Positions 39,703-63,230 are shown, numbered from the stretch's first letter. The stretch: DNA of 64,000 nucleotides from IMGVR_UViG_3300033143_006101:188877-252876, one strand, 5' to 3'. Numbers and translations: made by a program. Notes: generated by a model not told the origin, from the sequence alone.

Positions 39703-40866
39703 ATGTGGGCAGAAGGAATTGAAAGAAAGTCCGTGGCAAATGTTACTCCAAGTAAATATGATGAGAGACTTCTTAATCCTAAAGCTTTCGGTGGAATGAA
39801 TACTGCAGGTAAGCACACTGCTTCTGCAGAAGACATGTTTAACTCTAAGGGAGAACTTAATGCTTATAGCAAAGAAGACGCTATAAATCAGCAAATGAGA
39901 TTCGCTCAACTTAGAGCTAATTACCAAAGACCTGGAAAACAAGCCCAGTCTTACTTCACACCAGAAGAAAGACAAAGAATAGTTGAATCCGTTTTTGCTG
40001 CTGATGAGCAGGAAAGACTTAGATTCGGTGCGGAGATGATCCCATTGATTCTTGACAGATTGGACTATGAAGGTTTTATTCGTCAGGTTTTTAGAACCCA
40101 TCAACTTGCACAAGGACAGATTAACTCCTATGAAAAGGACGTTAATGTTACTGCTCTTGTAATACATGAAGATGGTCAGACAATCGAAAGCGTAGTTAAA
40201 GGTAATAGAATTTTCCCACCAGAATTCTTAGTAACAGCAATGCCAAAAATTACTATCTCTGAAATCGCAACACGTCAATACGACATAGTAGATAGAACAC
40301 ATGACAAGACTACTTTCCAAATCATGCTAACTGAGGACAGAAATGGTCTTAGAGAATTGTATCAGTCAGCTACATTAGAGAACTCACTAATTAACGTGAC
40401 TTCAACAATTAGCAAGAGTGTTCTTGAAACACTACAATACGAAGTCGAAAGACACAGATTGCTCGTTGATAAGTTTATTATGAACAGAGCTGAACTTGGT
40501 GACTTGAAGAAAAATATTAACGCAATTGATTACGATCCAATCACATCTCGTGACCTGTTATTAACAGGTATATTTGGATCAATCTGGGGAGTTAACATCT
40601 ATGTAACAGCTGGTGTTGACGAAGCAGGTATTGAAAACGTATCTGTACCAGAAGGAATGATCTTCGCAGTAACAGAAGGAAGATATTTAGGAGCAATGCC
40701 TATTAGGGTTGACCTTACTGTACTTCCTGCAGATCAATTCATTTTTGGAGCACCTCAATATGGTTGGTTGTTCGTTGAGCAAATTTCTCAAGTTGTTGTT
40801 AATCCAAGATCTGTAGCGTGTGCCGTTAAGAGCAGTGCGACCGTGCCTCAGTGGATGAGTGCATAG
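39703..40866 (+). CDS. Major capsid protein (HK97-like)
   Basis: 387 aa, highly expressed-type codons, RLDYEGFIRQ / PEF...P.I...EI..RQYDIVDR / GIFGSIWGVNI pattern; followed by a strong terminator. Confidence 0.85.
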   Translation: MWAEGIERKSVANVTPSKYDERLLNPKAFGGMNTAGKHTASAEDMFNSKGELNAYSKEDAINQQMRFAQLRANYQRPGKQAQSYFTPEERQRIVESVFAADEQERLRFGAEMIPLILDRLDYEGFIRQVFRTHQLAQGQINSYEKDVNVTALVIHEDGQTIESVVKGNRIFPPEFLVTAMPKITISEIATRQYDIVDRTHDKTTFQIMLTEDRNGLRELYQSATLENSLINVTSTISKSVLETLQYEVERHRLLVDKFIMNRAELGDLKKNINAIDYDPITSRDLLLTGIFGSIWGVNIYVTAGVDEAGIENVSVPEGMIFAVTEGRYLGAMPIRVDLTVLPADQFIFGAPQYGWLFVEQISQVVVNPRSVACAVKSSATVPQWMSA

Positions 40867-48353: not shown

Positions 48354-48440
48354 GGTGAGTTGGCAGAGCCCGGTTTATTGCACTGGTTTGCTAAATCAGA
48401 GGGTGTAACAGCCCCGAAGGTTCAAATCCTTCACTCACCG
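48354..48440 (+). tRNA. tRNA-Ser(GCT)
   Basis: GGTGAGT/ACTCACC acceptor, ctggt-ttGCTaa-atcag, long variable arm, G73. Confidence 0.93.
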
Positions 48441-48707
48441 AATTACTGCTAAAACAATAAAAGAAATGAAATTGTATGATATTATAGCAAAGATAATGCA
48501 AAGATAACGATTATTACTGATAAACCAGTAATAATTCTCGAATCGCGAATAGCGAATGGAGGGCTTTATGATAGCATATCAATGTATACGTAAAAGTTGT
48601 GGTAAAATAATATCATCTCATGAGGTCTTAAGAATAAGAAGACCTGATAAAATAACTAAGAAATGTCCTCATTGTAAAGGGCAAGTTAGTAAAATACATG
48701 TGAAATA

Positions 48708-48794
48708 GGAGCGGTGGCAGAGTCTGGCTAATTGCGTCAGTCTTGAAAACTGAAGGGTGTAACAGCCCCGTGGGTTCAAATCCTACCCGCTCCG
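48708..48794 (+). tRNA. tRNA-Ser(TGA)
   Basis: GGAGCGG/CCGCTCC, tcagt-ctTGAaa-actga, long variable arm. Confidence 0.95.
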
Positions 48795-48806
48795 AAGGAG
48801 AATGAA

Positions 48807-49105
48807 ATGGGGGCAAACGAAAAAAACCTTGGATCCATCAAGTAGGTCGAGTTGTTGCAAATAATGCAACAGTTGTTTCCGGGGAACAAACTTTTCGATT
48901 GGTAGACACGTTAGGAATACCATTAGAAATCATCCTGGAAAGGTTCGAGCAAGAAAATATTGTAGTCCAGTGGCAAAAGTTTTATGACATGGGACTAAAA
49001 GTAGGATGGAACGAACAGACCGTAATTGATCGAATGAAGTATGCTATTATTGATATTTATGGTATCCATTATTGGGAAGAAGTAAATAAAAGATTAAGGA
49101 GGTAA
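48807..49105 (+). CDS. Small protein resembling an alanyl-tRNA synthetase helical segment; needs a -1 frameshift from the RBS-linked ATG
   Basis: VSGEQTFRLVDTLGIPLEI resembles AlaRS SGEDAFKLYDTYGFPLDL; A_AAA_AAC at 48821-48827. Confidence 0.5.
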
Positions 49106-49143
49106 TACCATGTTATAGTTAAATCCAAGTAAGGAGAAAGATT

Positions 49144-49347
49144 ATGGCACATGGTTACAGGGCTTCCCGGATGTCTAATCATTGTGGGTATGACTATTGG
49201 AGTGCTAGAAAGCACAATAGAAATACCCTAAACAAAGCCAGGTGGTTAAGCCCAACAAGGCATAAATATTCTAAAAAGCTTACGTATCGAGAAGAACGAA
49301 AGATGAATAAACAAATTATTCAGGAGGACTTACATGAACTGTATTAA
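49144..49347 (+). CDS. Small basic Arg/Lys-rich protein
   Basis: AAGGAG RBS; GYDYWSAR motif. Confidence 0.6.
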   Translation: MAHGYRASRMSNHCGYDYWSARKHNRNTLNKARWLSPTRHKYSKKLTYREERKMNKQIIQEDLHELY

Positions 49348-49387
49348 GGAGGTTGGAGTTTTCTGACTTTAATGTTAGGAGGCTCTT

Positions 49388-49678
49388 ATGTTTTACTCTT
49401 GGAATAGCTGGACAGGAGAATACGACGAACACGATTGTCCTGTTTGGTGGATGTTGAATGATCATATTGGATATTATAGAATCCAACGAACGCAACAAGA
49501 AATGACTCGTTGGTACAGAGATTTAGAAGAACCAGTAAAGCTAAGACAACGGAGAAGTCCAAAAAACTTGAATCCGTGGATCATTGAGACGATCCCTAGT
49601 AGATGTTGTTCTAAATCCTGGAAAGACCTGTATAAAATTCGCAGGCAATGGCAGGCCCCGAAAACTATAGTACGGTGA
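49388..49678 (+). CDS. Small basic Trp/Arg-rich protein
   Basis: AGGAGG RBS; RTQQE...KLRQRRS..NL.PW...KSWK...RRQW. Confidence 0.6.
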   Translation: MFYSWNSWTGEYDEHDCPVWWMLNDHIGYYRIQRTQQEMTRWYRDLEEPVKLRQRRSPKNLNPWIIETIPSRCCSKSWKDLYKIRRQWQAPKTIVR

Positions 49679-49755
49679 AACCTGTAAGATATTTGACAAC
49701 TCCGGTCTCATTTTTGTTCAGAATGTAACCTCAAGGTTACAAACTGAACACTTTT

Positions 49756-49839
49756 GGTGCAGTTGAGCAGTGTGGTGTGCTTAGCAGGCTGTAAACCTGT
49801 GCTCATTTGAGATTAGTGGTTCGATTCCACTCTGCACCA
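49756..49839 (+). tRNA. tRNA-Tyr(GTA)
   Basis: GGTGCAG/CTGCACC, gcagg-ctGTAaa-cctgt, variable arm. Confidence 0.93.
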
Positions 49840-49918
49840 ATTTTAAAATCTATTTGAATCTTAAAAGTGATTGATAAATTACTACTCTTTAAATAAGAGT
49901 TACATAGGAGGTTCGAAT

Positions 49919-50178
49919 ATGAAATGTGAAAATTGCAACAACGAGCACGATGGTTCTTATGGTTCTGGTAGATTCTGCTCTGAAAAATGTGCTAGAGGAT
50001 TTTCTACGACGGTAATTCAAAGAATAACAAAGAAGAGAACCTGGAACTAATTTGTCCTAATTGTCATTCCTTGACTGTAAATTATGGTTCTTTAAACATG
50101 GGTAATGGTAGAAAATATTATAGGGATTTAAAAAGAAAACAAGCAGGTGTAGCTCAGATTGGGAGAGCACAAGACTGA
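49919..50178 (+). pseudogene. HNH endonuclease remnant (internal deletion/frameshift) running into tRNA-Phe
   Basis: MKCENCNNEHDGSYGSGRFCSEKCARGFST, then in another frame DGNSKNNKEENLELICPNCHS...KQAGVAQIGRAQD*. Confidence 0.7.
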
Positions 50179-50216
50179 AAATCTTGGTGTCGTCGGTCCG
50201 ATTCCGACCATCTGCA
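50143..50216 (+). tRNA. tRNA-Phe(GAA)
   Basis: caaga-ctGAAaa-tcttg; T-loop TCCGATT. Confidence 0.92.
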
Positions 50217-50296
50217 TATAATAGGACAAAAATCGGGGCATTTTGTCCCGATTTTTGTCCCGATTCAAATAAAATGTAATTTTTTGCAAAAAAAAG

Positions 50297-50327
50297 TGTA
50301 AAATTATGTCTAGTTATACTTTATATA
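50297..50327 (+). promoter_or_regulatory. TGTAAA-N16-CTTTATATA promoter-like motif inside the tRNA island
   Basis: Closely similar, including flanks, to the element upstream of parB. Confidence 0.6.
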
Positions 50328-50358
50328 AGTAGGGCATAAAAAGTAAAGGTTATAATAT

Positions 50359-50775
50359 ATGTCGTATAAAAATAAGCAAAGGCAATTAGAATACCAACGA
50401 AACTGGATGAGGAAAAGAAGAAATATGTTTTTTTCAGGTAAAGTTTGTGCGAAATGTGGGTCTTCAAAAAAATTGGTATTACATCATATAAATCCAGAAG
50501 AAAAAGAAAGTCATTATGTTTGGTCGTGGTCAGAAAAACGAAGAGAAGCAGAGCTTAAAAAATGTGTTGTTTGGTGCGAAAAGTGTCATATTGAATATCA
50601 TACAAATAAACGGAGATTAAAAAATATACATGGTACACGTACTGGATATAATAAGTATAAATGTCGTTGCGATGCTTGTATACAAGCTAATAGCCTATAT
50701 CAAAAACAATGGCGTAATCAAAAACAATTAGCTGGCGTTGTGTCCGAACTGGTTAGGTCATCGATTGCAACTTGA
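50359..50775 (+). CDS. HNH endonuclease (paralogue of 52502-52885); stop lies inside tRNA-Cys
   Basis: CAKCGS..LVLHHINP..K...ELKKCVVWCEKCH; HGTRTGY..CRC..C. Confidence 0.8.
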   Translation: MSYKNKQRQLEYQRNWMRKRRNMFFSGKVCAKCGSSKKLVLHHINPEEKESHYVWSWSEKRREAELKKCVVWCEKCHIEYHTNKRRLKNIHGTRTGYNKYKCRCDACIQANSLYQKQWRNQKQLAGVVSELVRSSIAT

Positions 50776-50805
50776 TATATGCAGGTTCGAATCCTGTCAA
50801 CGCCT
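50734..50805 (+). tRNA. tRNA-Cys(GCA)
   Basis: GGCGTTG/CAACGCC, U73, ttGCAac loop. Confidence 0.92.
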
Positions 50806-50811
50806 AATAAA

Positions 50812-50884
50812 ACTCCCAGAGTTCGACTGGCTGAACGCCTGTGTTACAAGCAGGTATGTCTTGGTTCAAATCCAAGTGGGAGTA
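50812..50884 (+). tRNA. tRNA-Val(TAC)
   Basis: ACTCCCA/TGGGAGT, cctgt-gtTACaa-gcagg; atypical G8 and G32. Confidence 0.85.
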
Positions 50885-50898
50885 ATAAGGAGAATAAT

Positions 50899-51486
50899 AT
50901 GTTTGAATTACAAGATTATTTAAAAAAATACGAAGATTTTAATGTAATAGATACAGATGCTTATTGTATTACAAAATCTAATATGAAAGATCAATTAAGT
51001 CATTGGGGTGCAGAAGAGATTGCTGAAAGATCATTTATTAATGCTCTTTGGATTACTTGTTCAGAATCCGGAAAGATAATATCATCAGATAATTTTGCAG
51101 AAACTGGACTAAAACATTTATTAGAAGCTGTACAATACGAAGTAGAAAAGAAGAGGAGACTTGTAGATGCTTTTCTTTTTAATAGAGCAATGTTAGGTAA
51201 CATGAAACATTATGTAAATGCTATTGATTTTGATCCTATAACGGACAAGGATAAATTAGTAACGGAGGGTATTTTTGGTAGTTTGTGGGGAGTAAATATA
51301 ACAATAATTACTACAATACCTCATAAAACTATTTTTTCAATAGAAGCTAAAAATACTTTAGGCTATTATCGAGTAGAAGGAGATATATTAGAAATAGGAA
51401 TTAATCCAGATGCAGTAGCAGTAGCAACTAAGAAAAAGTATATAAGGTCTAAGTTAGAACCTTTACCTTTAAACCTTGAAGAATAA
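50899..51486 (+). CDS. Truncated paralogue of the major capsid protein (195 aa)
   Basis: LEAVQYEVEKKRRLVDAFLFNRAMLGNMKHYVNAIDFDPIT...GIFGSLWGVNI vs MCP LETLQYEVERHRLLVDKFIMNRAELGDLKKNINAIDYDPIT...GIFGSIWGVNI. Confidence 0.85.
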   Translation: MFELQDYLKKYEDFNVIDTDAYCITKSNMKDQLSHWGAEEIAERSFINALWITCSESGKIISSDNFAETGLKHLLEAVQYEVEKKRRLVDAFLFNRAMLGNMKHYVNAIDFDPITDKDKLVTEGIFGSLWGVNITIITTIPHKTIFSIEAKNTLGYYRVEGDILEIGINPDAVAVATKKKYIRSKLEPLPLNLEE

Positions 51487-51487
51487 T

Positions 51488-51560
51488 GGGAGCGTAGCTC
51501 AATTGGGAGAGCGTCTGCCTTGCACGCAGAAGGTCGCGAGTTCGACTCTCGCCGCCTCCA
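51488..51560 (+). tRNA. tRNA-Ala(TGC)
   Basis: G3:U70, tctgc-ctTGCac-gcaga. Confidence 0.95.
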
Positions 51561-51581
51561 ATGGATCCATTAAGTTAGATC

Positions 51582-51654
51582 CCCCTTCTCTACACCAAGA
51601 ATGCTAAAATATGAGGGGCTATGAGTAGAGAACGGGTATTAATAGCCCCTCATA
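51582..51654 (+). ncRNA. Pseudoknot/switch element upstream of a small membrane-peptide gene
   Basis: 13-bp stem 51610-51622/51642-51654; loop GTAGAGAA is complementary to TTCTCTAC at 51586-51593. Confidence 0.55.
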
Positions 51655-51695
51655 AATAAGATGATATGAAGTAATCCACTATCAGGAGGTATACC

Positions 51696-51836
51696 ATGTC
51701 ATCTTGTAACAAATTATTAACCACTGCATTATGGATGATTGCAGGGTGTCTCATAGCGATACTTTTAACCTTGTTCACTTTTATGAACAAGATGGATTTA
51801 ATACTTCAAACATTAAAAAGTATGGCTGTTCTTTAA
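51696..51836 (+). CDS. 46-aa single-TM hydrophobic peptide
   Basis: AGGAGG RBS; MSSCNKLLTTALWMIAGCLIAILLTLFTFMNKMDLILQTLKSMAVL*. Confidence 0.6.
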   Translation: MSSCNKLLTTALWMIAGCLIAILLTLFTFMNKMDLILQTLKSMAVL

Positions 51837-51840
51837 AGAC

Positions 51841-51979
51841 GGGGGAGTGCAGGCCAATGGTTGGCCATCTGATTTTGGGTCAGACAAAGCACTGCATTAA
51901 AGCTGTATCAACTTGAACCTTTTAGGTTCCATAAGAAACCAGCGTACAAGCATATCGGTTCGATTCCGACTCTCCCCCA
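51841..51979 (+). tRNA. tRNA-like gene 1 (TTG anticodon) with ~70-nt variable-loop module
   Basis: GGGGGAG/CTCCCCC, ggcc/ggcc D stem, tctga-ttTTGgg-tcaga, GGTTCGATTCC; insert 51885-51954. Confidence 0.8.
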
Positions 51980-51981
51980 CA

Positions 51982-52194
51982 TGGCTCAACTGGTATAGCC
52001 AATCAGTTAAACGCAGAGATAACAGGCTCCTTTGAAAAAAACATGAGAGTCTCTGACAAAGGAAAGTTGATCACTAAACCTTGATACAAATCGCATGCGT
52101 GTATCTGCCTTCCAGGAAAGACTGGTTTACCCTATGCTTTCATCGGCATCGCCTTCATCGGCGTGATAGGGGTTGACAGCTCGGAAAGACGGGC
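51982..52194 (+). ncRNA. ~210-nt multi-pseudoknot structured RNA candidate
   Basis: Two H-type pseudoknots, twin TTCATC-loop hairpins, two GGAAAGAC hairpins, no ORF of 60 aa or more. Confidence 0.65.
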
Positions 52195-52199
52195 AACAC

Positions 52200-52342
52200 G
52201 GCGAAGTAGCCAAGTTGGGTAAAGGCACTAGAATTGAAATCTAGCTAACAGCAGACTAACTAAATTAACTTGAACTCAGAAGAGTTCCCCATAACTTAGT
52301 TTACAAGCAAAATTATCGATGGTTCGAGTCCATCCTTCGCCA
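52200..52342 (+). tRNA. tRNA-like gene 2 (TGA anticodon) with 73-nt variable-loop module
   Basis: GGCGAAG/CTTCGCC, ctaga-atTGAaa-tctag, gatgg-TTCGAGT-ccatc; insert 52245-52317. Confidence 0.8.
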
Positions 52343-52344
52343 AT

Positions 52345-52481
52345 GCCCGAGAAGCTCATGGAGAGCACTTTTTCTACTAAAAAAGAGGTAACAATTCTTT
52401 TGGGTTATTTCAACTTGAACTCTTTAGAGTTCCATCGGAACTAACTTACAAGCATTTGCCGTTCGATTCGGCACTCGGGCT
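52345..52481 (+). tRNA. tRNA-like gene 3 (ambiguous ACT / 8-nt loop) with 71-nt variable-loop module
   Basis: GCCCGAG/CTCGGGC, 5-nt D-loop, ctttt-tctactaa-aaaag, tgccg-TTCGATT-cggca; insert 52386-52456. Confidence 0.75.
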
Positions 52482-52501
52482 CATAAAATTTTAGAGGGTT
52501 T

Positions 52502-52885
52502 ATGCCATACAAGGATAAGGAGAAGCAATCAGAGTATCAGTTGCAATGGATGAAAGCTAGAAGAAATGCTTTCTTTAATGGCAAGTGTTGTAAAAAATGT
52601 GGGTCTATGTTTAACTTAGTCTTACACCATAAAAACCCAGCCGAGAAAGAAGATCATAGGATATGGTCGTGGTCGGAAGAAAGAAGAAATGCAGAACTTA
52701 AAAAATGTGTTGTTTGGTGTTTATCATGTCACATAGAACATCATGCTGATAGACTGAGATTAAAAGAAATACACGGCACAAGAACTGGTTATAAGAATTA
52801 TGGGTGTCGATGTAAAAAATGCACACAAGCAAATACGGTTTACATAAGAAATTGGAATAGAAGAAAAAAAGGGGTATTCGTCTAG
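52502..52885 (+). CDS. HNH endonuclease; stop lies inside tRNA-Glu
   Basis: CKKCGS..LVLHHKNP...ELKKCVVWCLSCH. Confidence 0.8.
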   Translation: MPYKDKEKQSEYQLQWMKARRNAFFNGKCCKKCGSMFNLVLHHKNPAEKEDHRIWSWSEERRNAELKKCVVWCLSCHIEHHADRLRLKEIHGTRTGYKNYGCRCKKCTQANTVYIRNWNRRKKGVFV

Positions 52886-52943
52886 TGGACTAGGACATCG
52901 GGTTTTCAATCCGACAACAGGAGTTCAATTCTCCTATACCCTA
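52871..52943 (+). tRNA. tRNA-Glu(TTC)
   Basis: tcggg-ttTTCaa-tccga; GTCTAGTGG..AGGAC D arm. Confidence 0.93.
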
Positions 52944-52956
52944 ATAAGGAGACAAT

Positions 52957-53613
52957 ATGAAACCAAGTGATGCAGGCATAGCAAACTCATTACATTTTAC
53001 GAGTAAAGATTATCCTGAAGAGGTGAAGAAGAATTTTCTTACTATCACCTAGGATGGGAAAAGAGGCAGACCAAAGTTTCCTGAAAGGACTTGTTCACGA
53101 TGTGAAAAGATTACTGAGAGGAAAAACAAATCCGGGATGTGTCAAAAATGTTTAAAACTTACTAACAAAGAAAGAAGAGAGGAAGAAAAAGCAGCTGAGC
53201 CTAAGTATAACTGTAAAGAATGCACTGCACCGATTACCAGGCATAGTAAATCAGGATTGTGTCAGACATGTTTTAGTTTAACTCGTACCAAGATGCCAAC
53301 AGAGGAAGTACTCGAAGAAGATGTTAAAAAATTAAGCGTAATAGCAATGAGTAAAAAGTATGGGGTATCTGATGCAACCATAAACAAATGGATGAGGCTT
53401 TATGGAATAAAAAGAGTACTTTCTTGGCGTAGGACATTGCCATCCGAAGAACAGCTTAAAAAAGATTTAGTGGATCTGCGGTATGACGATATAGCAAAGA
53501 AGTATAACGCAACAAAAAACCAAATTAACAAATGGATAAAGCATTACAATCTACAAGGCTATAAAAAGATTTTAAGAATAGAGGGAAAGAAAAACGAAAA
53601 CAATAAAGGGTGA
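52957..53613 (+). CDS. Zn-finger/HTH protein interrupted by an in-frame TAG at 53050-53052
   Basis: AAGGAG RBS and ATG 52957 are in frame with ORF 53137; a repeated CxxC...KSGxCQxC unit spans the predicted start. Confidence 0.55.
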
Positions 53614-54055
53614 TTTAATCAAGTTAGCATTGGAAGGGCACTTCGATGTTATTATTCATGGATGTAATTGTTATCGTACCATGGGTAAAGGTATTGCAAG
53701 TACTATTAAACGAGTTTTTCCTGAAGCATACACAGCCGATAGAGAAACACGTGCCGGAGCCAGCAAGCTTGGTACTTTTTCTCATGCTACAGTCGTAAGA
53801 CCAAAGGGAAGAATAACTATTGTAAATGCATACACACAAGACAGATTTAATCCTAAATACAGTAAAGGAAAAAGCATGGCTGATTACCGGGCAATAACTG
53901 ATGTAATGAAAAGCATCAAAGTGGCATTTCACGGATTTAGAATTGGTTATCCTAAAATAGGAGCAGGGCTTGCTCGTGGTGATTGGAATAAAATATCTGA
54001 AATTATTGATAGAGAGTTGGAAGGAGAAGATCACACGTTGGTAGTATTACCATAA
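53594..54055 (+). CDS. Macrodomain (ADP-ribose/Appr-1''-p processing) protein, apparent ACG start
   Basis: KTIKGDLI...IIHGCNC..TMGKGIA, VNAYTQ, YPKIGAGLARGDW. Confidence 0.85.
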   Translation, partial: TKTIKGDLIKLALEGHFDVIIHGCNCYRTMGKGIASTIKRVFPEAYTADRETRAGASKLGTFSHATVVRPKGRITIVNAYTQDRFNPKYSKGKSMADYRAITDVMKSIKVAFHGFRIGYPKIGAGLARGDWNKISEIIDRELEGEDHTLVVLP

Positions 54056-54060
54056 AATAC

Positions 54061-54135
54061 AGAGGCATAGCATAGTTTGGTCAAATGCAGCGGGTTTTGA
54101 TCCCGTGATCTCAAGTTCAAATCTTGATGCCTCTA
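54061..54135 (+). tRNA. tRNA-Gln(TTG)
   Basis: AGAGGCA/TGCCTCT, gcggg-ttTTGat-cccgt. Confidence 0.92.
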
Positions 54136-54754
54136 ATAAAGGAGATAGATGTGGGTGAAGAGCATAAAGATTGTGATTGTGGTGGTGATGAAGATGATTG
54201 TGTTTGTGACAATGATGATGATATAATTATACTAGATGATGAAGAAGACATAGAGAAAATAAGCACTCCAAGTATAAATAATTTGTTAGAAACAATAATT
54301 AAAGAATTACAGACTATGAATACTAAAATAGAAAAGATTAATAATAAATTAAAAGCATTAAGTGATAGGGTAGACGAAATTTATATGGATGGTTTTTGAT
54401 ATGGGAAATTAAGATGAAACCAAATGATGTATTAAAATGGGATCCACATTGGGTTAAATATAGTGACCCCAATAAAGATAGATTAGTCAGTTTAAAAGTA
54501 ACACATCTTCGGACAGAGACTTCTGTAGAAGTACGAAATTATGCATCAGGTTTAGATTATACTGTCACAATGGATTTTTTAAAAGATCGATTACATGTAC
54601 TGACCGATTACACAGATGGAAAAAGAATGTAAGTGTGGAGCCATGATGCTCCATATAACATTTGCTAACAAAGCAAAGTTAGCAGTATATCATTGCAAGA
54701 AGTGTGGAAGAACAGTCACAGAACCATTAAATGAAACTATAAAGAGGATATAAT

Positions 54755-55864
54755 ATGAAAGCACCACCAAAGAAAAAAACAACAGGTAAAGGTAAAACAG
54801 CAAGTAAAAATGCCCCTAAGAGAAAACCAGTAGAAAGAGAAGAAATTTCAAAGGTTGAAGAGATATTCTCAGAGGACAATGCTCGTATAAGATTCGGGGT
54901 AGAATGTGTACCAGCGATTAAGGTACGAATGCAATCAGATCCAAATTCTTTTGCCCATTTGTTTCATAGTTATATATTAGAGCAAGGGCAGATAGGATGC
55001 CATAACTTACACCCACCAAGAAAAATTCTTTACCTGGAAGATAAACAAGAAGGTCCTGAGAGTTTAGGTACTCGAGTAGATATTAGTAATAAAACTTCAA
55101 GGGTTTTTCCCAGTGAATATGTTATAGCCATAACTGTGGATATACCCCTATCAGAAATAGCGATTCGTACCAAGATAGACATACTCCATAAAGAGCTTGT
55201 TGATACAGCTTCTTCAAAATTAAACAGGAATATAGCTACGAATTGGCTCAAGCTTCTTTATGCCTCTGCACTGGTTAATAAAAATATTAAAACTCTAAGA
55301 AGCTTCTGGAGGAACATCCCAGTTATTCGTTGGAAAGTTCTTTTTAGTTTAATCACTAAAGCGAGAAGTAAAATTCATCAAAGGGGGTACCAGACATTGG
55401 TATTTTTAGTTCACCCGGCAACACTTGCGGAATTGGAACTATTTCTTGGAGGCCATCTAAGAGTAACTTCAACCAGTTTTCCATATGTTAAACAATCAAT
55501 ATATGTTCCGGAAGGGTTTGTGCTTATATTTCCCAATGATAGGACTATGGCTGCAAAGAATATACGAATAGATTTGACTGCGTTTGGGGCTAATAAGTTT
55601 GTTATGGGATCAGCTACCTTTGGGTTTATGTTTGTACAGTCTGAGTCCTCTGTTATTCTTGATCCCGAATCCGTAGTTTGTATTAGAATGAGTAATTTTA
55701 AAATTCCTGGTTATCTAAAAGAAATTAAGTCTTATCTGATGCCTACGGTTTTTTCTAAGCTAAAAGAGAAAAGCATAAAGCTGTGGGGAAAAGTTAAGAA
55801 GTTAAAGAATAAGATAATGAATAGGATAAAGAAGTTTAGGAAGAAAAATGCTGGAATCGCATAG
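54755..55864 (+). CDS. Divergent full-length paralogue of the major capsid protein with Lys-rich termini
   Basis: RIRFGVECVP/QGQI/RVFPSEY/SEIAIR/VPEG/IRIDLT..ANKF..FGFMFV..DPESV align in order with MCP RLRFGAEMIP/QGQI/RIFPPEF/SEIATR/VPEG/IRVDLT..ADQF..YGWLFV..NPRSV. Confidence 0.85.
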   Translation: MKAPPKKKTTGKGKTASKNAPKRKPVEREEISKVEEIFSEDNARIRFGVECVPAIKVRMQSDPNSFAHLFHSYILEQGQIGCHNLHPPRKILYLEDKQEGPESLGTRVDISNKTSRVFPSEYVIAITVDIPLSEIAIRTKIDILHKELVDTASSKLNRNIATNWLKLLYASALVNKNIKTLRSFWRNIPVIRWKVLFSLITKARSKIHQRGYQTLVFLVHPATLAELELFLGGHLRVTSTSFPYVKQSIYVPEGFVLIFPNDRTMAAKNIRIDLTAFGANKFVMGSATFGFMFVQSESSVILDPESVVCIRMSNFKIPGYLKEIKSYLMPTVFSKLKEKSIKLWGKVKKLKNKIMNRIKKFRKKNAGIA

Positions 55865-55933
55865 AGGTCGAGTGCACCTGCCTTGTAAGCAGGAGGGTAA
55901 ACCCCCGCGTCAGTTCAAATCTGACTTCCAGCT
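55850..55933 (+). tRNA. tRNA-Thr(TGT) with long variable arm
   Basis: GCTGGAA/TTCCAGC, cctgc-ctTGTaa-gcagg, 15-nt variable region with a GGG-taaa-CCC stem. Confidence 0.9.
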
Positions 55934-55939
55934 CATAAA

Positions 55940-56372
55940 GCAAAATGCAGATACTGCTTTAGGAAGTTAGAGATACTTCTAAAAAACTCCGTACATACTA
56001 CGATAGTGTATGGGTGCTCTTTCTGCTGAGATCCTTATGGGAGTAGAATCACTAGGAGGCGAGACTGGTGAAAAACTAAAAACCGCCAGAAGACTAAAAA
56101 TGCTGCATCGTTTTTAGTCTGAGGTGCTTGATGGCGAAAGTTAGACGCTGAGTAAGGGCGGAAACGTCAAGAAAGCCGAGGTTGTGATATTAGCAACGAG
56201 CATATGGGTATCAAATCCCATTCAAGCACATCTCTGTTCGGATCGTTGGTCACTGTTTGGGTAGAATCCTTCTGAGATACCGTAATTCGATCTTTATGCC
56301 CAACATTGTGCATGCAGAGTAATCCTCGGACCGAATGTACCCCTTAAGGAAGGAGCTAAGGTTTGGGGTATT
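55940..56372 (+). ncRNA. ~430-nt structured RNA candidate containing a tRNA-like domain without an anticodon arm
   Basis: ORF-free, GC-enriched, serial hairpins; tRNA-like domain at 56124-56230. Confidence 0.65.
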
Positions 56373-56391
56373 TAATTGAAGGTATAATTAA

Positions 56392-56852
56392 ATGATAAAA
56401 AGATGGAAAGATAACGATATACTTATTATGAAAAGTATGATTAATGAAAAGACAAGCCCAGAAATTGCAGAGATATTTGAAACTTCTACTAAAGCAATTA
56501 ATAGTTTATTCACAAGAAGAAAAATTATTCGAAATAAAGAAATATCAAAAGAGCATGTTAGAAAAAGTTTGATAAAAAGAAATAAAAAAAATTATGGGGA
56601 TAAAAATGGTAACTGGAAAGGAGGAATATCAAAAAATAATTATCATTACAAAAAATTACAAATTGAAAAATTTCCAGAGAGAGAGTAAAGGCACGAGGTA
56701 AAGTGCATAAAGCAATTAAAAGCGGAAAGTTAAAAAGAAAACCATGTGAAATTTGTAATTCAAAAGATGTGCAGGCACATCATAATGATTATTCTAAACC
56801 ACTAGAGGTTAAATGGTTTTGTAGAAAACATCATAGAGAGTATGAACAATAG
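56392..56852 (+). pseudogene. HNH-type endonuclease frameshifted in an (AG)5 run; stop overlaps +1 of tRNA-Asp
   Basis: GDKNGNWKGG...FPER, then in another frame VKARGKVHKAIKSGKLKRKPCEIC...AHHNDYSKPLEVKWFCRKHH. Confidence 0.75.
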
Positions 56853-56923
56853 GAGCTTTAGTTTACTTGGGAAAACACTACCCTGTCACGGTAGAGTAAG
56901 GAGATCGAAACTCCTAAGCTCCG
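56852..56923 (+). tRNA. tRNA-Asp(GTC)
   Basis: GGAGCTT/AAGCTCC, ctacc-ctGTCac-ggtag; T-loop ATCGAAA. Confidence 0.92.
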
Positions 56924-56926
56924 AAT

Positions 56927-57322
56927 TGTCAGGTAGGTTGCCTCACGAGAGGCTCGGCATTTGATAGTACCAATCCCGTAATTAGTAGGGCTATCAAATA
57001 CTGCTCGGTACTGGTTAGGGTCTGAGTCAGTTTGGTTTCTAGAAAAGCTAGATTATTATAGTTTCATCAGGTTATTAGGACCGCTTCGTGAAGCAACTTG
57101 GATGAACAACTTCTAGCTGATCATTCTGAAGAACTTGGCGGTTAGGGGAAACAGATGTGATAAGGATGAAGATTGAAACTAGGATCCAATTGTAAACTTA
57201 TCTTACTTAAAAATAGTAGAAGGGATTGAGGCGACTCCCACTCGGTTTATAATATTAAATAAACTCTAACTATTCTGAGTAAAAGCCTTCACCCTAGATT
57301 AGCGACCTGGGGCTATCTGACA
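56927..57322 (+). ncRNA. ~400-nt structured RNA candidate closed by a terminal helix
   Basis: TGTCAGGTAG/CTATCTGACA closing stem; many nested stems; ORF-free. Confidence 0.65.
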
Positions 57323-58285
57323 CAACTATGGATCCATAGTTATTTGGGGTATAATGATTAACGTATTTATGACAATACATCAGAAACAGCAATCTCTTAT
57401 TAGTCCAGAGGCTACTGATACTATTACTTCAATTTGTATTACAGCAATTATTATTTGTATTATATTATTTATATCTGTACTTTTTATGTTATATAGAAAT
57501 AAATGGATATTTGGTAATGCTCTTATTCTTTCAAGAATGGTGTTTGCAAGACAACTTAATACTCTAATGTTTCAAGAAGCAGAAATTTATACTAGTGAAG
57601 AATTGTATGCTAATAATTGGTCATATAATAAAATGCTTTTTTCAATTTGGGTATGGACACCACTAAAAATGGCTTATAATAAGAAAATGTTGGATTATGT
57701 TGTAATGGGTGTGTTACCTGATATTAGGGAAAGAATTATAGATGTTTCTATTGAAGAAGTCTGGAAGAAAAACCCAAAACCATGGGAAGCATTAAAAAAA
57801 AGAACTTATGGCTTTCTGTGCAATTGAAGGGTGTGTACAATGATTATAACAAATATTGCGATAGCTCTTATAACTATTTTAGTACTTATTGATGTTATAT
57901 TATTAACCGCTAATATTATGGATAAAGATAATAATCTAAGTATACTAAGCTGTATTGGTGGAATATTTATAATTGTACTTATTACATGGTTTATGATAGT
58001 AGCACCTACATTTAAGGATAGTGATAAAGAACTAAAGAGGTTAGAAATGTCATTAATAAAAGAACCAAAAGAAATGACTCTACATTCTTTGAATAAGGAA
58101 CTAGAAAAATATTATGATGAGCACGGTCGTGAATATGGAGAAGAAAGTAAGATATTCTACAAATGTGAATTAGAATTATTTGATAGAATAAGAGAAGCAA
58201 TTAAAGATGATAGAGAAACTCTAGTACTATTTGAGTTTACTAGAAAATTTGCTGAGATGAAATCAGCTTGTGCGGGGAATTAGAT

Positions 58286-59470
58286 ATGAAAGAATTAATA
58301 AATAGACAAATCGATGGTAAAATAAGTAACGATAATGTAGAAGAATGTAATTCCAGTTATAAGGCAACTATCCTAAAGGGAGCACCCAAAGGACTTGCTG
58401 TTTTTGAACAATATGGTAATTTAGTTCTTAAGCAAATAACACATGATGTTGTTACACAACATACTTTAGATAAAAAATTATTTTTGACTTTTGTGCTACA
58501 TCTTCCTCTTAGAAATGAAAATTTAGACGCTTTATTTTTAGAGAAATTTTCTGAGCTAGGAGATGTTTATAGAATGGAAGATGGTTTAATGAGTTATAAA
58601 AGTATCGTAGTAGCAAAGGATTTTATAATTCGATACGAAAGTGGGGAAAGTACTGTTAAAATAGCTCATATTTATCTTGCTCTGCATGTACAAACACTAC
58701 AACAAAGAGATATTCTTATTTTAAAATTAAAGGAATTATTTAAAGATCATATTGTTACTGATATAAATGTAAACGTATCATTTTTTTATCTTACTAAACA
58801 TGGATTAAAAAATTTAGGTTTTGATATGATATATACACCCGAGCTACCCGAAGTAAATTATCCTTACATTTCAATTGATAAAAATGTTAAGGATATGAAT
58901 GAATATATAGAAAAATATATTAAAAGTGAATCTCCTATAATTATTCTAATGGGAGAACCTGGAACAGGTAAAACAAGGTTTATTAGATATCTTCTATCAA
59001 AGTTAAAATGTCATTATAATGCAGATTGGAATGTATATTTCACAGTGGATCCGGAAGTGCTAAAAGACACGGTGTTCTTTGTGAATTTTATGGCTTCTAC
59101 GTCAAGAGCAATGGTAGTAGAAGACATGGATAAAAATCTTCACGCGAGAATAGAAGGCAATGAGGTAATGTATAGTTTACTTGGAATATCTGATGGCATC
59201 ATAAATATAGAAGAAAAGAAAATGATCTTTTCTACTAATCTACCTTCTATAAAAAATATAGACTCGGCTATTATCAGAGAAGGTAGATGCTATGATATTC
59301 TAAATTTTAGAGCATTAACTGTAAATGAATCAAATGCATTTTTAGCATATAATAAAAAAGGGGATTTAGATTTAGTAAAAGATTCATATACTCTTGCTGA
59401 ACTATATGCACTAATAAACGGTAACCCTAATAATTCTCATATAAGAAAAACAGGATTCAAAAATGAATGA
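58286..59470 (+). CDS. AAA+ ATPase
   Basis: GEPGTGKT, VVEDMD, FSTNL..IDSAIIREGRCYD. Confidence 0.85.
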   Translation: MKELINRQIDGKISNDNVEECNSSYKATILKGAPKGLAVFEQYGNLVLKQITHDVVTQHTLDKKLFLTFVLHLPLRNENLDALFLEKFSELGDVYRMEDGLMSYKSIVVAKDFIIRYESGESTVKIAHIYLALHVQTLQQRDILILKLKELFKDHIVTDINVNVSFFYLTKHGLKNLGFDMIYTPELPEVNYPYISIDKNVKDMNEYIEKYIKSESPIIILMGEPGTGKTRFIRYLLSKLKCHYNADWNVYFTVDPEVLKDTVFFVNFMASTSRAMVVEDMDKNLHARIEGNEVMYSLLGISDGIINIEEKKMIFSTNLPSIKNIDSAIIREGRCYDILNFRALTVNESNAFLAYNKKGDLDLVKDSYTLAELYALINGNPNNSHIRKTGFKNE

Positions 59471-60235
59471 GAATAAACACTGGCAAGTTATGGTAATGCG
59501 AAGAAGGTGGTATCATGCTTTATACTATTGGTTAAGAAGACTTCGTGGGAGAGATTTTAGTAAAGCTAAAGAGTATTTTGTAGGATTTCATATGAAGATT
59601 ACAGATGATGGTATAATGGATGAACCTACTTGTTCTCATATAGTTGAGACTTTTGAAAGTACACAAGGTTATACGCCTGCTTATGAAACTTTATCAGAAA
59701 GAAATAAGGATGTTAAATATGAATGATTGGTTGTTAACTATTATAATGCTTATATTAATAGTTATGTGTATTATATTATTAGGTATAGGTGAATTACTTC
59801 AAATGATTTTAGTGGTATTGAAATGAAAAGGAGATAATTAAAATGTTAGATGATTTATTACCTCCTATAGGAGGATGTCCAATATCAGTTACTTTATGCA
59901 AAGATTGCCGTTATTTGTCTAGTGGAGGTTCTGAGCCAAGTGTAAACAGTGAAGAGTATAAAGAAGTAAAAAAGAAGTATCCGCATGTACAAAATATGCT
60001 GACAAAATATAGAGAGTGTAGTAGTTTTAATGTAATTTTCAGAATTTTTAATTCTATGGTAAAAAGGTTTTTTGGGGATAAAATACAAACGGTTCTTAAT
60101 GAAGATGACTATTGGGATTTAAGACTTCTACTCAGTTATGCACATTTTGTAAGAACAGGAGAAAAGAGAAAGGATATTGAAGGTCCTGAAAATGAAAATG
60201 ATCTTGATGAATGTATAGAATGGAAAAGATTATAA

Positions 60236-60307
60236 TGCTGGGTAGCTCAGAGGGAGAGCTCGTGTTTGTTAAACACAGGGTCGGCGGTTCAATCCCGTCC
60301 CCAGCAG
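60236..60307 (+). tRNA. tRNA-Asn(GTT)
   Basis: TGCTGGG/CCCAGCA, ttGTTaa loop, G73. Confidence 0.9.
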
Positions 60308-60493
60308 ATAAAAATAGATTTTGGAGATGTTAGTTATGGCAGAAAAAGTAAAAATAATTGTACTTAAGTCTAGGAATAAACGATTGAGAGGCATGAGGAA
60401 ATTCATTACTGAACATATTGATGAATTGGATTGTTTATTCACTGAAAAAGAACAGGACAAATTGAATAAGATTAAGGCAAGGAGAAGTTCTGT

Positions 60494-60850
60494 ATGCTAG
60501 TAAAATTATTAAACTGGCTCATTAAACGTCTTAAGTTAACAGGAAAGATTTCAGATGGGTATCATACTTTTGATGAATTGTATGAACATAGAGTAAGATT
60601 GTATTTAGCTCTTTGTAAACATGGCCCCAAGTTTGTCTGGAAGTCACGGAAACATTCAGATGGAACTTCATACCCTGGATGGTTTTTGTTAGGAATGAAT
60701 ACCGTTCCCGGATTGCAAATGACGTATCATATTCCGGATAAGTATTGGGATCACTGCCAATAGTATCGAGAGTTAGATCAAGCTCCTAATTTTGATGGAC
60801 ATACATCGAATGATGTACTAACAAGAATCCACAGAGAGTTGATTATTTAA
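60494..60850 (+). CDS. Conserved phage protein (SDGYHTFDELY...DGH family) interrupted by an in-frame TAG at 60761-60763
   Basis: The family motif APNFDGHTSNDVL lies in frame after the TAG. Confidence 0.65.
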
Positions 60851-60876
60851 GTTGTAATAGGCATCATATTAAAAAA

Positions 60877-60951
60877 CGGGGTGTAGGCTAGTCAGGCTAA
60901 GTCGCCTGCTTTGGGAGCAGGAAATCGGAAGTTCGAATCTTCTCACCCCGA
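60877..60951 (+). tRNA. tRNA-Pro(TGG)
   Basis: CGGGGTG/CACCCCG, cctgc-ttTGGga-gcagg. Confidence 0.95.
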
Positions 60952-60968
60952 ATGATAAGGTTATTCAT

Positions 60969-61574: not shown

Positions 61575-61643
61575 ATAGTATAAGAATATTCAATCAATTT
61601 ATTTTTGATTAGGGTATAAAGTCTGGCCACACAACCAGATAAT

Positions 61644-63201: not shown

Positions 63202-63230
63202 AATTAAAAATTAAACTAAGGAGGTATTTT

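What the first reader, a model, noticed from the sequence alone, without database searches (positions are those of the whole stretch)
50899..55864. Two paralogues of the major capsid protein lie inside the tRNA island
Seen: 50899-51486 (195 aa) preserves the C-terminal half of MCP 39703-40866 with high local identity but lacks most of the N-terminal half. 54755-55864 is a divergent, near full-length copy with added Lys-rich N- and C-terminal tails. Neither is in the late operon and neither has the CCTTAA late promoter. Established: MCP triggers translation-targeting defences (CapRel-SJ46, Lit via the Gol peptide). Inference: non-assembling capsid mimics co-expressed with the tRNAs may titrate capsid-sensing immune receptors. 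Alternatives are minor/vertex capsid proteins, dominant-negative weapons against competing phages, or an RNA-binding shell (basic tails).
Basis: partly seen in the sequence, partly recalled or inferred. Interest (0 to 1): 0.78.

Follow-up and report, generated by a model that had tools for sequence, protein, structure and literature searches.

The report
Capsid-protein paralogues inside phage tRNA island
A jumbo phage carries, wedged between its tRNA genes, two diverged copies of its own capsid protein; one belongs to an undescribed, very fast-evolving family of capsid-fold proteins that related phages also keep among their tRNA genes, and what it does is not known.

Summary
ORF 50899-51486 (P1) and ORF 54755-55864 (P2) are both homologous to the major capsid protein (MCP) at 39703-40866 (BLASTP E 1e-26 and 8e-27), and both lie between tRNA genes.

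P2 is not a private duplicate. It groups (100/98-99 support) with seven metagenomic proteins of 281-303 aa, and an AU test rejects a recent copy of the window's own MCP (p 0.005). These proteins start where P2 starts on the MCP. That is the complete minimal capsid core, as in phage G gp27 (282 aa). Their end branches are roughly ten or more times longer than MCP end branches. Half have Lys-rich N-termini. None lies beside recognised head genes. Four of the eight members have a tRNA gene within about 35 nt.

P2 models as a full HK97 fold (pLDDT 81) and is strongly basic (pI 10.1, net +32; MCP net -10).

P1 has no relatives. Only aa 68-139 clearly match the MCP, but synonymous sites there are saturated while 58% of residues are kept, so it is not a fresh pseudogene.

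Function is untested. My best guess is accessory capsid mimics acting off the shell. A vertex (penton) protein is the main rival. The immune-decoy idea is neither supported nor excluded.

The parts
39703..40866 (+). Bona fide major capsid protein (387 aa), the reference for both paralogues. Residues 1-85 are an N-terminal extension absent from phage G gp27 and from the NF042927 profile.
50899..51486 (+). P1, 195 aa, acidic (pI 5.2). An MCP-derived protein reduced to roughly the A-domain, known only from this phage.
   Evidence: AAGGAG Shine-Dalgarno site 8 nt upstream of the ATG
51100..51315 (+). P1 core (aa 68-139), the only part with robust MCP homology (MCP 232-302). 41 of 71 residues are identical and synonymous sites are saturated.
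54755..55864 (+). P2, 369 aa. Member of the short MCP-like family with a full HK97 fold; pI 10.1, net charge +32.
54755..54844 (+). P2 Lys-rich N-terminal tail (aa 1-30, net +8). Modelled with low confidence and without secondary structure up to aa 24.
55715..55864 (+). P2 C-terminal basic tail (aa 321-369; the last 45 aa have net charge +15). Predicted as a long helix over aa 330-365. Absent from the other family members.
55027..55170 (+). 144-bp in-frame deletion polymorphism. A near-identical strain (contig L003, protein P0002) lacks P2 aa 92-139, i.e. most of the E-loop hairpin, the next beta-strand and a short helix.
50812..50884 (+). tRNA-Val; it ends 14 nt before the P1 start codon.
51487..51561 (+). 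tRNA-Ala; it begins directly after the P1 stop codon.
55850..55934 (+). tRNA-Thr; its first 15 nt overlap the last P2 codons and the stop codon.
54124..54753 (+). Three small overlapping or abutting ORFs (91, 78 and 45 aa) between tRNA-Gln and P2, packed as one unit with P2. They have no homologues next to the other family members.
50359..50775 (+). HNH homing endonuclease just upstream of tRNA-Cys, tRNA-Val and P1. Its paralogue lies at 52502-52885 (71% nucleotide identity).

Best explanation
P2 belongs to an old, very fast-evolving family of accessory MCP paralogues carried by an uncultured clade of jumbo phages with a phage-G-type capsid protein. I call them short MCP-like proteins. P1 is a further reduced, lineage-specific derivative that keeps little more than the A-domain.

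Shown for the family:
- It keeps the whole minimal HK97 core.
- It has lost about two thirds of the residues that are invariant in the true MCPs.
- It lacks the MCP's 85-residue N-terminal extension.
- It lies in tRNA or auxiliary-gene regions, not next to recognised head genes.
- Half of its members, P2 included, carry polycationic N-termini. P2 adds a strongly basic C-terminal helix.

Inferred:
- These proteins do not build the main shell.
- They work off the lattice as capsid-fold mimics. The HK97 core engages something that normally engages the MCP (the MCP itself, an assembly factor, or a host sensor of capsid proteins). The basic tails bind nucleic acid or another polyanion.
- The very high rate of change fits a role in phage-host or phage-phage conflict. 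The patchy detection would fit too, but it may only reflect search sensitivity. An immune decoy is one such role.

The family-level description is well supported. The functional part is a guess.
For: Paralogy.

Family: an exhaustive phmmer search of 1.84 billion representative proteins with P2 returned nine hits. These were its own deletion variant, seven proteins of 281-303 aa, and one ordinary MCP.

Phylogeny: P2 plus the seven form one clade (100/98 and 100/99) in LG+C20 trees, also with phage G gp27 as outgroup. End branches are 1.2-4.9 changes per site, against a median of 0.18 for all rows in the tree (most MCPs 0.02-0.46; the outlying MCP P0128 1.5-1.6). The AU test rejects P2 as sister of its own MCP (p 0.005).

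Fold and core: the AF2 model has pLDDT 80.8 and pTM 0.76. It matches HK97-fold capsids and encapsulins with Foldseek probability 1.0 and VIA-align Z up to 16.8 over aa 40-314. Phage G gp27 is 282 aa and aligns from MCP residue 83 onward.

Divergence from the MCP: P2 keeps 17% of MCP-invariant residues in the A-domain centre and 27-38% elsewhere. P2 gets no NF042927 hit and the two short members scanned (P0124, P0127) fall below its cut-off.

Context:
- P0131 lies inside a 15-tRNA island, with tRNA-Phe starting 1 nt after its stop.
- P0124 has tRNA-Leu 9 nt after its stop.
- P0129 has tRNA-Asp 34 nt before its start.
- P2's stop overlaps tRNA-Thr.
- Recognisable neighbours are RF-1-like, Ro60/TROVE, NADAR, Cpn10, ARPP-1, R2K ATP-grasp and FtsH-like proteins. 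None is a recognised head protein, and many neighbours have no annotation.

Charge.

A further MCP-like ORF on the P0127 contig is fused to an RRXRR domain (PF14239, E 3e-12).

The P1 core has pS 0.83 (saturated) and dN 0.41. The chance of 195 open codons at this base composition is about 1e-7.

MCP-homologous DNA occurs at exactly one place in each of 315 cultured phage records that match. The window's MCP finds P1 and P2 at E 1e-26 in direct comparison, so this MCP type does not usually come with a detectable second copy.
Against: - No experiment or expression data exist. Timing is unknown, and the sigma-70-like sites in the island are no more frequent than in shuffled sequence.
- P2 keeps every element needed for assembly, so co-assembly into the virion is not excluded.
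- The parts best conserved with the MCP are MCP 136-185, which holds the E-loop (47% of invariant residues kept on average in the seven short members, 33% in P2), and the C-terminal block (30-38%). The A-domain centre is the least conserved (16-17%). That is the pattern expected of a penton-specialised paralogue.
- 'Patchy distribution' may be a sensitivity artefact. At this rate, orthologues in even the nearest sequenced relatives would sit at the detection limit of a single-sequence search.
- The clade could in part reflect long-branch attraction (warnings).
- Lys-rich tails can arise neutrally in an AT-rich genome.
- P1 has no relatives at all, its structure model is poor (pLDDT 48), and 46 synonymous sites is a small sample.
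Confidence: 0.4

Rival explanations
1. P2 and its family are penton (vertex) or other minor capsid proteins. In this reading a short MCP paralogue fills the fivefold vertices while the long MCP forms the hexons. The basic N-terminal arm faces the packaged DNA.
For: - Precedent: phage Jabs builds its capsid from a 594-aa hexon MCP and a 257-aa penton MCP. T4 gp23/gp24 is a similar case (my own knowledge).
- P2 has a complete HK97 core equal to the phage G capsid protein.
- Divergence is greatest in the A-domain, which surrounds the capsomer axis. MCP 136-185 (with the E-loop) and the C-terminal block, expected to touch neighbouring capsomers, are better kept.
Against: - End branches are about ten or more times longer than most MCP branches, which is unexpected for a protein that must fit a slowly evolving lattice.
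- It is encoded 14 kb from the head genes among tRNAs and homing endonucleases, whereas the Jabs (and T4) pairs are adjacent genes.
- 315 cultured phages with this MCP type show a single MCP locus each.
- A natural strain lacks most of the E-loop.
- P2 has a 45-residue basic C-terminal helix. By analogy with encapsulin C-termini it should point outward (my own knowledge).
Confidence: 0.25
2. The short MCP-like proteins form, or are remnants of, a separate encapsulin-like shell or capsomer. It would bind nucleic acid (possibly RNA or tRNA) through basic or RNA-binding N-terminal modules that face the lumen.
For: - The size (281-303 aa) and fold match Family 1 encapsulins, which fill most of the top structural matches.
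- Four of eight members have polycationic N-termini.
- A neighbouring MCP-like ORF is fused to an RRXRR domain and a Cys/His-rich segment.
- Genes recur next to tRNAs and near Ro60/TROVE and RF-1-like genes.
Against: - Structural similarity to encapsulins is generic for compact HK97 models, and a phage procapsid protein ranks first.
- There is no Linocin_M18 match.
- No conserved partner or cargo gene exists.
- Half of the family lacks a basic N-terminus.
- tRNA islands are general dumping grounds for accessory genes.
Confidence: 0.1
3. P1, and perhaps P2, are functionless leftovers. They would be pieces of capsid genes carried into the tRNA island by recombination linked to the many homing endonucleases there, still open by chance.
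For: - P1 is a singleton with no homologue outside this phage.
- Its model is poor.
- It sits between two paralogous HNH endonuclease genes, and a LAGLIDADG endonuclease follows the MCP gene.
- A strain with a fold-damaging deletion in P2 exists.
Against: - Synonymous sites between the P1 core and the MCP are saturated (pS 0.83), yet 58% of residues persist.
- 195 and 369 open codons are very unlikely by chance at 33% G+C (1e-7 and 6e-14).
- Both have strong ribosome-binding sites and fit exactly between tRNAs.
- The P2 family is kept as intact ORFs in eight lineages that share only about 20-39% identity.
- The P2 deletion is in frame.
Confidence: 0.12

Closest known systems
Phage G gp27 / NCBIfam NF042927 'HK97-fold major capsid protein' (PDB 6wkk)
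   Same: The window's MCP is a clear member (154 bits, cut-off 80; E 8e-39 to 6wkk_A). P2 and the short family start and end where this 280-282-aa capsid protein does, so they hold its full core.
   Different: P2 gets no hit. P0127, P0124 and P1 score 41, 27 and 16 bits, far below the cut-off. gp27 is much closer to the long MCPs (130-148 bits) than to the short proteins (20-36 bits). The short proteins are not next to recognised head genes.
Penton-specialised MCP paralogues: phage Jabs MCPp (257 aa) beside MCPh (594 aa); T4 gp24 beside gp23
   Same: A second, shorter HK97-fold paralogue sits in the same genome as the main capsid protein (T4 from my own knowledge).
   Different: In those phages the two genes are adjacent in the head module and both products are virion components. 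Here the paralogue is 14 kb away in the tRNA island, evolves far faster than the MCP, and carries polycationic tails. Virion presence is unknown.
Family 1 (classical) encapsulins
   Same: HK97 fold of about 260-290 aa without a scaffold-like N-terminal extension. They are the most numerous top structural matches to the P2 model (Z 14-16.6).
   Different: No Linocin_M18 sequence match and no adjacent cargo gene. The gene is encoded by a lytic-type jumbo phage and clearly derives from that phage clade's own MCP.
Family 4 'A-domain' encapsulins (PF08967/DUF1884; PMC8346489)
   Same: These are a natural precedent for an HK97 protein reduced to the A-domain alone. P1's recognisable part is the A-domain core.
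   Different: P1 is 195 aa rather than about 100. It has no PF08967 match and no enzyme partner. It is 58% identical to a phage MCP in its core, whereas A-domain encapsulins have almost no sequence similarity to capsid proteins. Its fold could not be modelled.
Phage proteins that block sensors of structural proteins (e.g. DSAD1 against DSR2, PMC11087589) and defence systems triggered by MCPs (CapRel-SJ46, Avs7/Dsr1, Thoeris; PMC13728456, 10.64898/2026.01.04.697583)
   Same: These papers show that MCPs are frequent immune triggers, and that DSAD1 counteracts DSR2, a defence that recognises the tail tube protein. The window region also carries an Apyc1-like anti-Pycsar gene and a macro-domain gene.
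   Different: As far as I know DSAD1 is not a homologue of the trigger (my own knowledge). A diverged copy of the trigger itself acting as a decoy has not been described in what I could search. Nothing here tests binding to any sensor.

Membership tests
HK97-fold major capsid protein, phage G type (NF042927 / phrog_2522) | Sequence scores above the curated family cut-off | tested here: not met
   MCP scores 154 bits (cut-off 80). P1 scores 15.6 bits and P2 gets no hit. In PHROGs, P1 matches at E 3e-4 and P2 gets no hit. Homology itself is certain.
HK97-fold major capsid protein, phage G type (NF042927 / phrog_2522) | Complete HK97 fold (N-arm helix, E-loop, P-domain with spine helix, A-domain) | tested here: met
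   Met for P2: pLDDT 80.8, Foldseek probability 1.0, Z up to 16.8 over aa 40-314. Inconclusive for P1: pLDDT 47.9, and only the A-domain part is recognisable.
HK97-fold major capsid protein, phage G type (NF042927 / phrog_2522) | Encoded in the head-morphogenesis module | tested here: not met
   P1 and P2 lie 10 and 14 kb downstream of the MCP, between tRNAs and homing endonucleases. The other family members also lack recognised head-gene neighbours.
HK97-fold major capsid protein, phage G type (NF042927 / phrog_2522) | Forms the virion shell | not testable with these tools
   The phage is uncultured and known only from a metagenome; no proteomics exist.
Penton-specialised MCP paralogue (Jabs MCPp, T4 gp24) | Paralogue of the hexon MCP in the same genome | tested here: met
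Penton-specialised MCP paralogue (Jabs MCPp, T4 gp24) | Gene adjacent to the MCP gene and co-inherited with it in all relatives | tested here: not met
   It is not adjacent. No second copy lies within +-10 kb of the MCP in about 20 related loci. None lies within about 20 kb downstream in the relative with 85% MCP identity. Presence elsewhere in those genomes could not be checked.
Penton-specialised MCP paralogue (Jabs MCPp, T4 gp24) | Occupies the fivefold vertices of the virion | not testable with these tools
   Needs cryo-EM or virion mass spectrometry.
Encapsulin, Family 1 | Linocin_M18 (PF04454) sequence signature | tested here: not met
   No Pfam family at E <= 0.01 for P1 or P2.
Encapsulin, Family 1 | Adjacent cargo protein with a targeting peptide | tested here: not met
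   Neighbours differ in every locus and share no homology.
Encapsulin, Family 4 (A-domain, PF08967) | About 100-aa A-domain-only protein with the DUF1884 signature, downstream of an enzyme gene | tested here: not met
   P1 is 195 aa, has no PF08967 hit, and is flanked by tRNAs.
Anti-defence decoy of capsid-sensing immunity (no defined family) | Binds a capsid sensor without activating it and relieves defence | not testable with these tools
   There is only circumstantial context: an Apyc1-like gene, a macro-domain gene and the tRNAs nearby.

The most novel reading that the evidence does not exclude
The short MCP-like proteins (P2 and relatives, perhaps also the A-domain remnant P1) are homologue-based immune decoys. 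In this reading, diverged copies of the phage's own capsid protein are made together with the tRNAs. They occupy host sensors that recognise the HK97 fold (CapRel, Avs7/Dsr1, Lit or Thoeris type) without triggering them. That would protect translation until the real capsid protein appears. It would be the first case of a phage using a paralogue of the trigger itself as the counter-measure.
Probability: 0.15. Interest if true: 0.85.

Novelty: new variant of a known kind. Interest (0 to 1): 0.6.

Why it matters
Capsid proteins are now known to be among the commonest triggers of bacterial immunity. The HK97 fold has also been reused outside virions, in encapsulins. Here is a family of capsid-derived proteins that phages themselves keep outside the head module. 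It changes far faster than the capsid protein, often carries nucleic-acid-binding-type tails, and repeatedly sits among tRNA genes. It is either a hidden class of vertex proteins in jumbo phages or a new exaptation of the capsid fold (decoy, competitor poison or RNA-binding shell). Either answer is directly testable with recombinant protein, and either would change how second 'capsid' hits in phage genomes are annotated.

Tried and rejected
- Word-based homologue searches. P1 found only itself. P2 found itself plus a deletion variant from the same phage population. Scans of IMG/VR with P1 and P2 found only the source contig.
- Scans with alignments of short-family subgroups. The alignment of all eight had no conserved stretch to search with. 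The P0127 group pulled only true MCPs from IMG/VR. The P0124 group and P0131 found nothing. The metagenome scan found nothing.
- tblastn of P2 and P0127 against 50,697 cultured phage records gave no match.
- Synteny through the AAA protein downstream of P2 returned only the window's own contig.
- Walking 20 kb downstream of the MCP in the relative with 85% MCP identity found no tRNA island and no paralogue there. The rest of that genome could not be read.
- No conserved partner gene exists next to family members.
- The P1 structure model was too poor (pLDDT 48) to use for fold search.
- CCTTAA as a late-promoter word is not enriched. Sigma-70-like sites in the island are not above shuffled expectation.

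Ideas rejected:
- P2 is a recent duplicate of its own MCP. The AU test gives p 0.005.
- The short proteins are simply the real MCPs of phage-G-like phages. gp27 is far closer to the long MCPs than to them. They also lack head-gene neighbours, and those scanned fall below the family cut-off.
- P1 and P2 are two halves of one broken gene. This was suggested because P1 keeps exactly MCP 232-302, the stretch P2 fails to match. But P2 is one continuous ORF with its own diverged segment in place of that stretch. That segment is modelled as strand-helix elements, partly at low confidence. P1 resembles MCPs, not P2.

Full report
**Source and setting**

The window is the last 64 kb of a 252,876-bp metagenomic jumbo-phage contig, IMGVR_UViG_3300033143_006101. 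It has 33% G+C. No cultured phage record matches the tRNA-island region at the DNA level apart from a tRNA.

The gene at 39703-40866 is a genuine major capsid protein (MCP). It matches phrog_2522 at E 5.8e-55. It matches NCBIfam NF042927 'HK97-fold major capsid protein' at 154 bits against a cut-off of 80. It matches the phage G capsid protein gp27, PDB 6wkk, at E 8e-39. More than 170 metagenomic relatives exist, the listed ones at 61-100% identity, and several sit on contigs of 200-240 kb.

**Checking the observation**

P1 (50899-51486, 195 aa) matches the MCP at E 1e-26, and P2 (54755-55864, 369 aa) at E 8e-27. They do not match each other directly.

A profile of 66 MCPs sharpens the picture:
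- P1 matches only MCP 232-302, through its residues 68-139 (77 bits; 41 of 71 residues identical).
- It has a marginal collinear match near its C-terminus.
- Its first 64 residues match nothing.
- The BLAST alignment shows two internal gaps. One removes a 23-residue stretch (MCP ~338-360) from the block holding the LPADQF...YGWLF motif, the most conserved C-terminal block of the family.

P1 is therefore essentially an A-domain remnant.

P2 matches MCP 85-227 and 308-384. It has a diverged segment in place of MCP 228-307.

Both ORFs have strong ribosome-binding sites and fit exactly between tRNA genes:
- P1 begins 14 nt after tRNA-Val and ends where tRNA-Ala begins.
- P2's last 15 nt overlap tRNA-Thr.

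P2 is very basic (pI 10.1, net +32). The first 30 residues carry +8 and the last 45 carry +15. The MCP has pI 5.2 and net -10.

**P2 belongs to a family**

An exhaustive search of 1.84 billion representative proteins with P2 gave nine hits:
- its own variant;
- one ordinary MCP;
- seven proteins of 281-303 aa (P0124-P0127, P0129-P0131) at about 20-26% identity to P2 over full-length alignments.

All seven begin at about MCP residue 85-95, as P2 does. Three of them (P0124, P0125, P0129) also start with a run of lysines.

This is not a truncation of the fold. Phage G gp27, which builds a real capsid, is only 282 aa and aligns from MCP residue 83 onward. The NF042927 profile has 280 positions. 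The window's MCP therefore has an extra 85-residue N-terminal extension, and the short proteins hold the complete minimal core.

The short proteins are not ordinary phage-G-like MCPs either. gp27 scores 130-148 bits against the long MCPs but only 20-36 bits against the short ones. Of those scanned, P0127 and P0124 fall far below the family cut-off and P2 gets no hit.

**Phylogeny and rate**

In LG+C20 trees, P2 and the seven short proteins form one clade with 100/98 and 100/99 support. This holds with phage G gp27 as outgroup, even though that long branch could have attracted them.

Within the clade, P2 is sister to P0124 + P0129 (86/78), the members that share the Lys-rich N-terminus.

An AU test rejects P2 as sister of its own MCP (p 0.005). 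Whether the clade branches inside or beside the long-MCP clade is unresolved (p 0.36).

End branches of the short proteins are 1.2-4.9 changes per site. The median over all rows in the tree is 0.18; most MCPs have 0.02-0.46 and the outlying MCP P0128 has 1.5-1.6. Long-branch artefacts cannot be excluded, and the tool warns of them. However, the shared start point, the shared N-terminal character and the shared genomic setting are independent of the tree.

P2 keeps only 17% of MCP-invariant residues in the A-domain centre and 27-38% elsewhere.

**Structure**

With a 74-sequence alignment, P2 models as a full HK97 fold (pLDDT 80.8, pTM 0.76):
- N-arm helices at 25-61;
- E-loop hairpin at 83-117;
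- spine helix at 141-174;
- A-domain and C-terminal sheet up to about residue 312;
- a long C-terminal helix at 330-365.

Foldseek and VIA-align place it among phage capsid proteins in the procapsid state and Family 1 encapsulins. Foldseek probability is 1.0 and Z reaches 16.8 over residues 40-314.

P1 could not be modelled (pLDDT 47.9).

**Genomic context in other phages**

| Protein (locus) | tRNA genes nearby | Annotated neighbours |
|---|---|---|
| P2 (window) | stop overlaps tRNA-Thr | small ORFs, HNH endonucleases, macro domain |
| P0131 (L010) | inside a 15-tRNA island; tRNA-Phe 1 nt after the stop | RF-1-like, DUF4031, Ro60/TROVE |
| P0124 (L012, L013) | tRNA-Leu 9 nt after the stop | NADAR, Cpn10, R2K |
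| P0129 (L039) | tRNA-Asp 34 nt before the start; tRNA-Gln and tRNA-Met further upstream | R2K ATP-grasp |
| P0126 (L009, 10 kb) | none | DUF5662, FtsH-like |
| P0127 (L038, 3.7 kb) | none | ARPP-1; second MCP-like ORF |
| P0125, P0130 | contigs too short to tell | - |

So four of the eight members have a tRNA gene within about 35 nt, and none lies next to a recognised head gene (many neighbours have no annotation).

The island here (48354-63488) is about 6% of the genome. My own arithmetic gives four or more of eight by chance at roughly 7e-4. The cases are not independent if the position is inherited.

The second MCP-like ORF on the P0127 contig is cut by the contig end. Its capsid-like part, from about MCP residue 121, is fused to an RRXRR domain (PF14239, E 3e-12) and a Cys/His-rich segment.

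No neighbouring gene is shared between the loci.

In about 20 related loci there is no second MCP copy within 10 kb of the MCP. There is none within about 20 kb downstream in the relative with 85% MCP identity.

In 315 cultured phage records that match this MCP, the match is at a single place each.

**Are the genes decaying?**

- For the P1 core against the MCP, the proportion of synonymous differences is 0.83, beyond saturation. dN is 0.41. Under neutral drift since the split, the protein similarity would be gone. The sample is small (46 synonymous sites).
- For P2, dS is about 2.0 and dN 0.80.
- At the window's base composition, the chance of 195, 281 or 369 open codons is 1e-7, 9e-11 and 6e-14. 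All eight family members are intact.

Against strict constraint, a sister sample holds a contig from a near-identical strain (one mismatch in 2,255 nt). It carries an in-frame 144-bp deletion (55027-55170). This removes P2 residues 92-139: most of the E-loop, the next strand and a short helix.

**Interpretation**

What is shown:
- P2 is a member of an old, rapidly changing family of accessory capsid-protein paralogues.
- The family retains the minimal HK97 core and lies outside the head module, often among tRNAs.
- Several members carry polycationic or nucleic-acid-binding-type N-termini.
- P1 is a lineage-specific, selected, A-domain-sized derivative.

What is inferred: they do not form the main shell. 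They act as capsid-fold mimics, in conflict with the host or with competing phages, and the basic tails bind a polyanion.

The main rival is a vertex protein. Phage Jabs has exactly such a pair, a 594-aa hexon protein and a 257-aa penton protein. The better conservation of the E-loop region and the C-terminal block relative to the A-domain centre fits that reading. Four things argue against it:
- the extreme rate;
- the location away from the head genes;
- the single MCP locus in cultured relatives;
- the E-loop deletion strain.

None of these is decisive. At this rate, orthologues in the nearest sequenced relatives would lie at the detection limit, so 'patchy' cannot yet be told from 'universal'.

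It also fits the literature showing that MCPs trigger many defences. Nothing here tests it, and a mimic of a trigger might just as well set off the alarm.

**Comparison with what is known**

My literature searches found MCP paralogues in giant eukaryotic viruses, the Jabs pair, and A-domain encapsulins. They found no description of HK97 paralogues embedded in phage tRNA islands, and no homologue-based capsid decoys.

I rate this a new variant of a known kind (HK97-fold paralogues and exaptations), of moderate to high interest. A clear set of computations and bench tests would settle it.

Noticed in passing
window 41013-41981: A LAGLIDADG-type homing endonuclease gene sits directly after the MCP gene, behind a near-consensus sigma-70-like promoter (TTGACA, 17 nt, TATAAT). 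The relative with 85% MCP identity has no such gene after its MCP.
   Followed up: partly
window 38146-38847 and 38983-39678: Two tandem paralogues (38% identity, E 2e-49) lie just upstream of the MCP. They have weak matches to Ig-like virion and tail-protein families. The close relative (L006) has a single 232-aa gene at that place.
   Followed up: partly
window 52200-52342: Rfam calls a tRNA spanning 143 nt (53 bits) that ARAGORN did not report, possibly an intron-containing tRNA. Rfam also finds a tRNA at 63417-63488 that ARAGORN missed.
   Followed up: no
window 43761-44642 and 53630-54055: A metallo-beta-lactamase-fold protein carries a precomputed Anti-Pycsar Apyc1 hit (it also resembles RNase Z). 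A macro-domain protein (phrog_335) lies in the same downstream region, so counter-defence-type genes sit in the same block as the tRNAs.
   Followed up: partly
window 55850-55864; also L010 4812/4813 and window 51486/51487: The P2 stop codon lies inside tRNA-Thr. P1 and P0131 end exactly where a tRNA begins. If the genes are co-transcribed, RNase P cleavage at the tRNA 5' end would remove P2's last five codons and its stop, so mRNA and tRNA maturation may compete.
   Followed up: no
L038 3091-3654: A second MCP-like ORF lies on the P0127 contig and is cut by the contig end. It has an N-terminal RRXRR domain (PF14239, E 3e-12), then a Cys/His-rich segment, then a capsid-like part starting at about MCP residue 121. 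It is either a nucleic-acid-binding fusion or a homing-endonuclease remnant fused to a capsid fragment.
   Followed up: partly
L006 13972-14045, L028 13687-13760, L035 3383-3456: The relative with 85% MCP identity carries a tRNA with anticodon CTA (reads UAG; ARAGORN labels it Pyl) 2.8 kb downstream of its MCP. This may be an amber-suppressor tRNA. The window shows no sign of recoded stops.
   Followed up: no
L010 4983-5324 and 8114-9733: The tRNA island that holds P0131 also encodes an RF-1-domain protein and a Ro60/TROVE-vWA protein (E 1e-63). Both are RNA or translation quality-control functions.
   Followed up: no
window 50359-50775 and 52502-52885: Two paralogous HNH homing endonuclease genes (phrog_4234; 71% nucleotide identity) bracket the P1 region. 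More HNH or HTH endonuclease-like ORFs lie at 53137-53613, 56703-56852 and 60969-61415.
   Followed up: partly
window 22024, 31462, 35751, 44658 (+ strand): CCTTAAA lies about 45-70 nt upstream of four + strand genes (starts at 22103, 31526, 35797, 44725), so a phage-specific promoter is possible. The hexamer is under-represented overall (35 found, 55.5 expected).
   Followed up: partly
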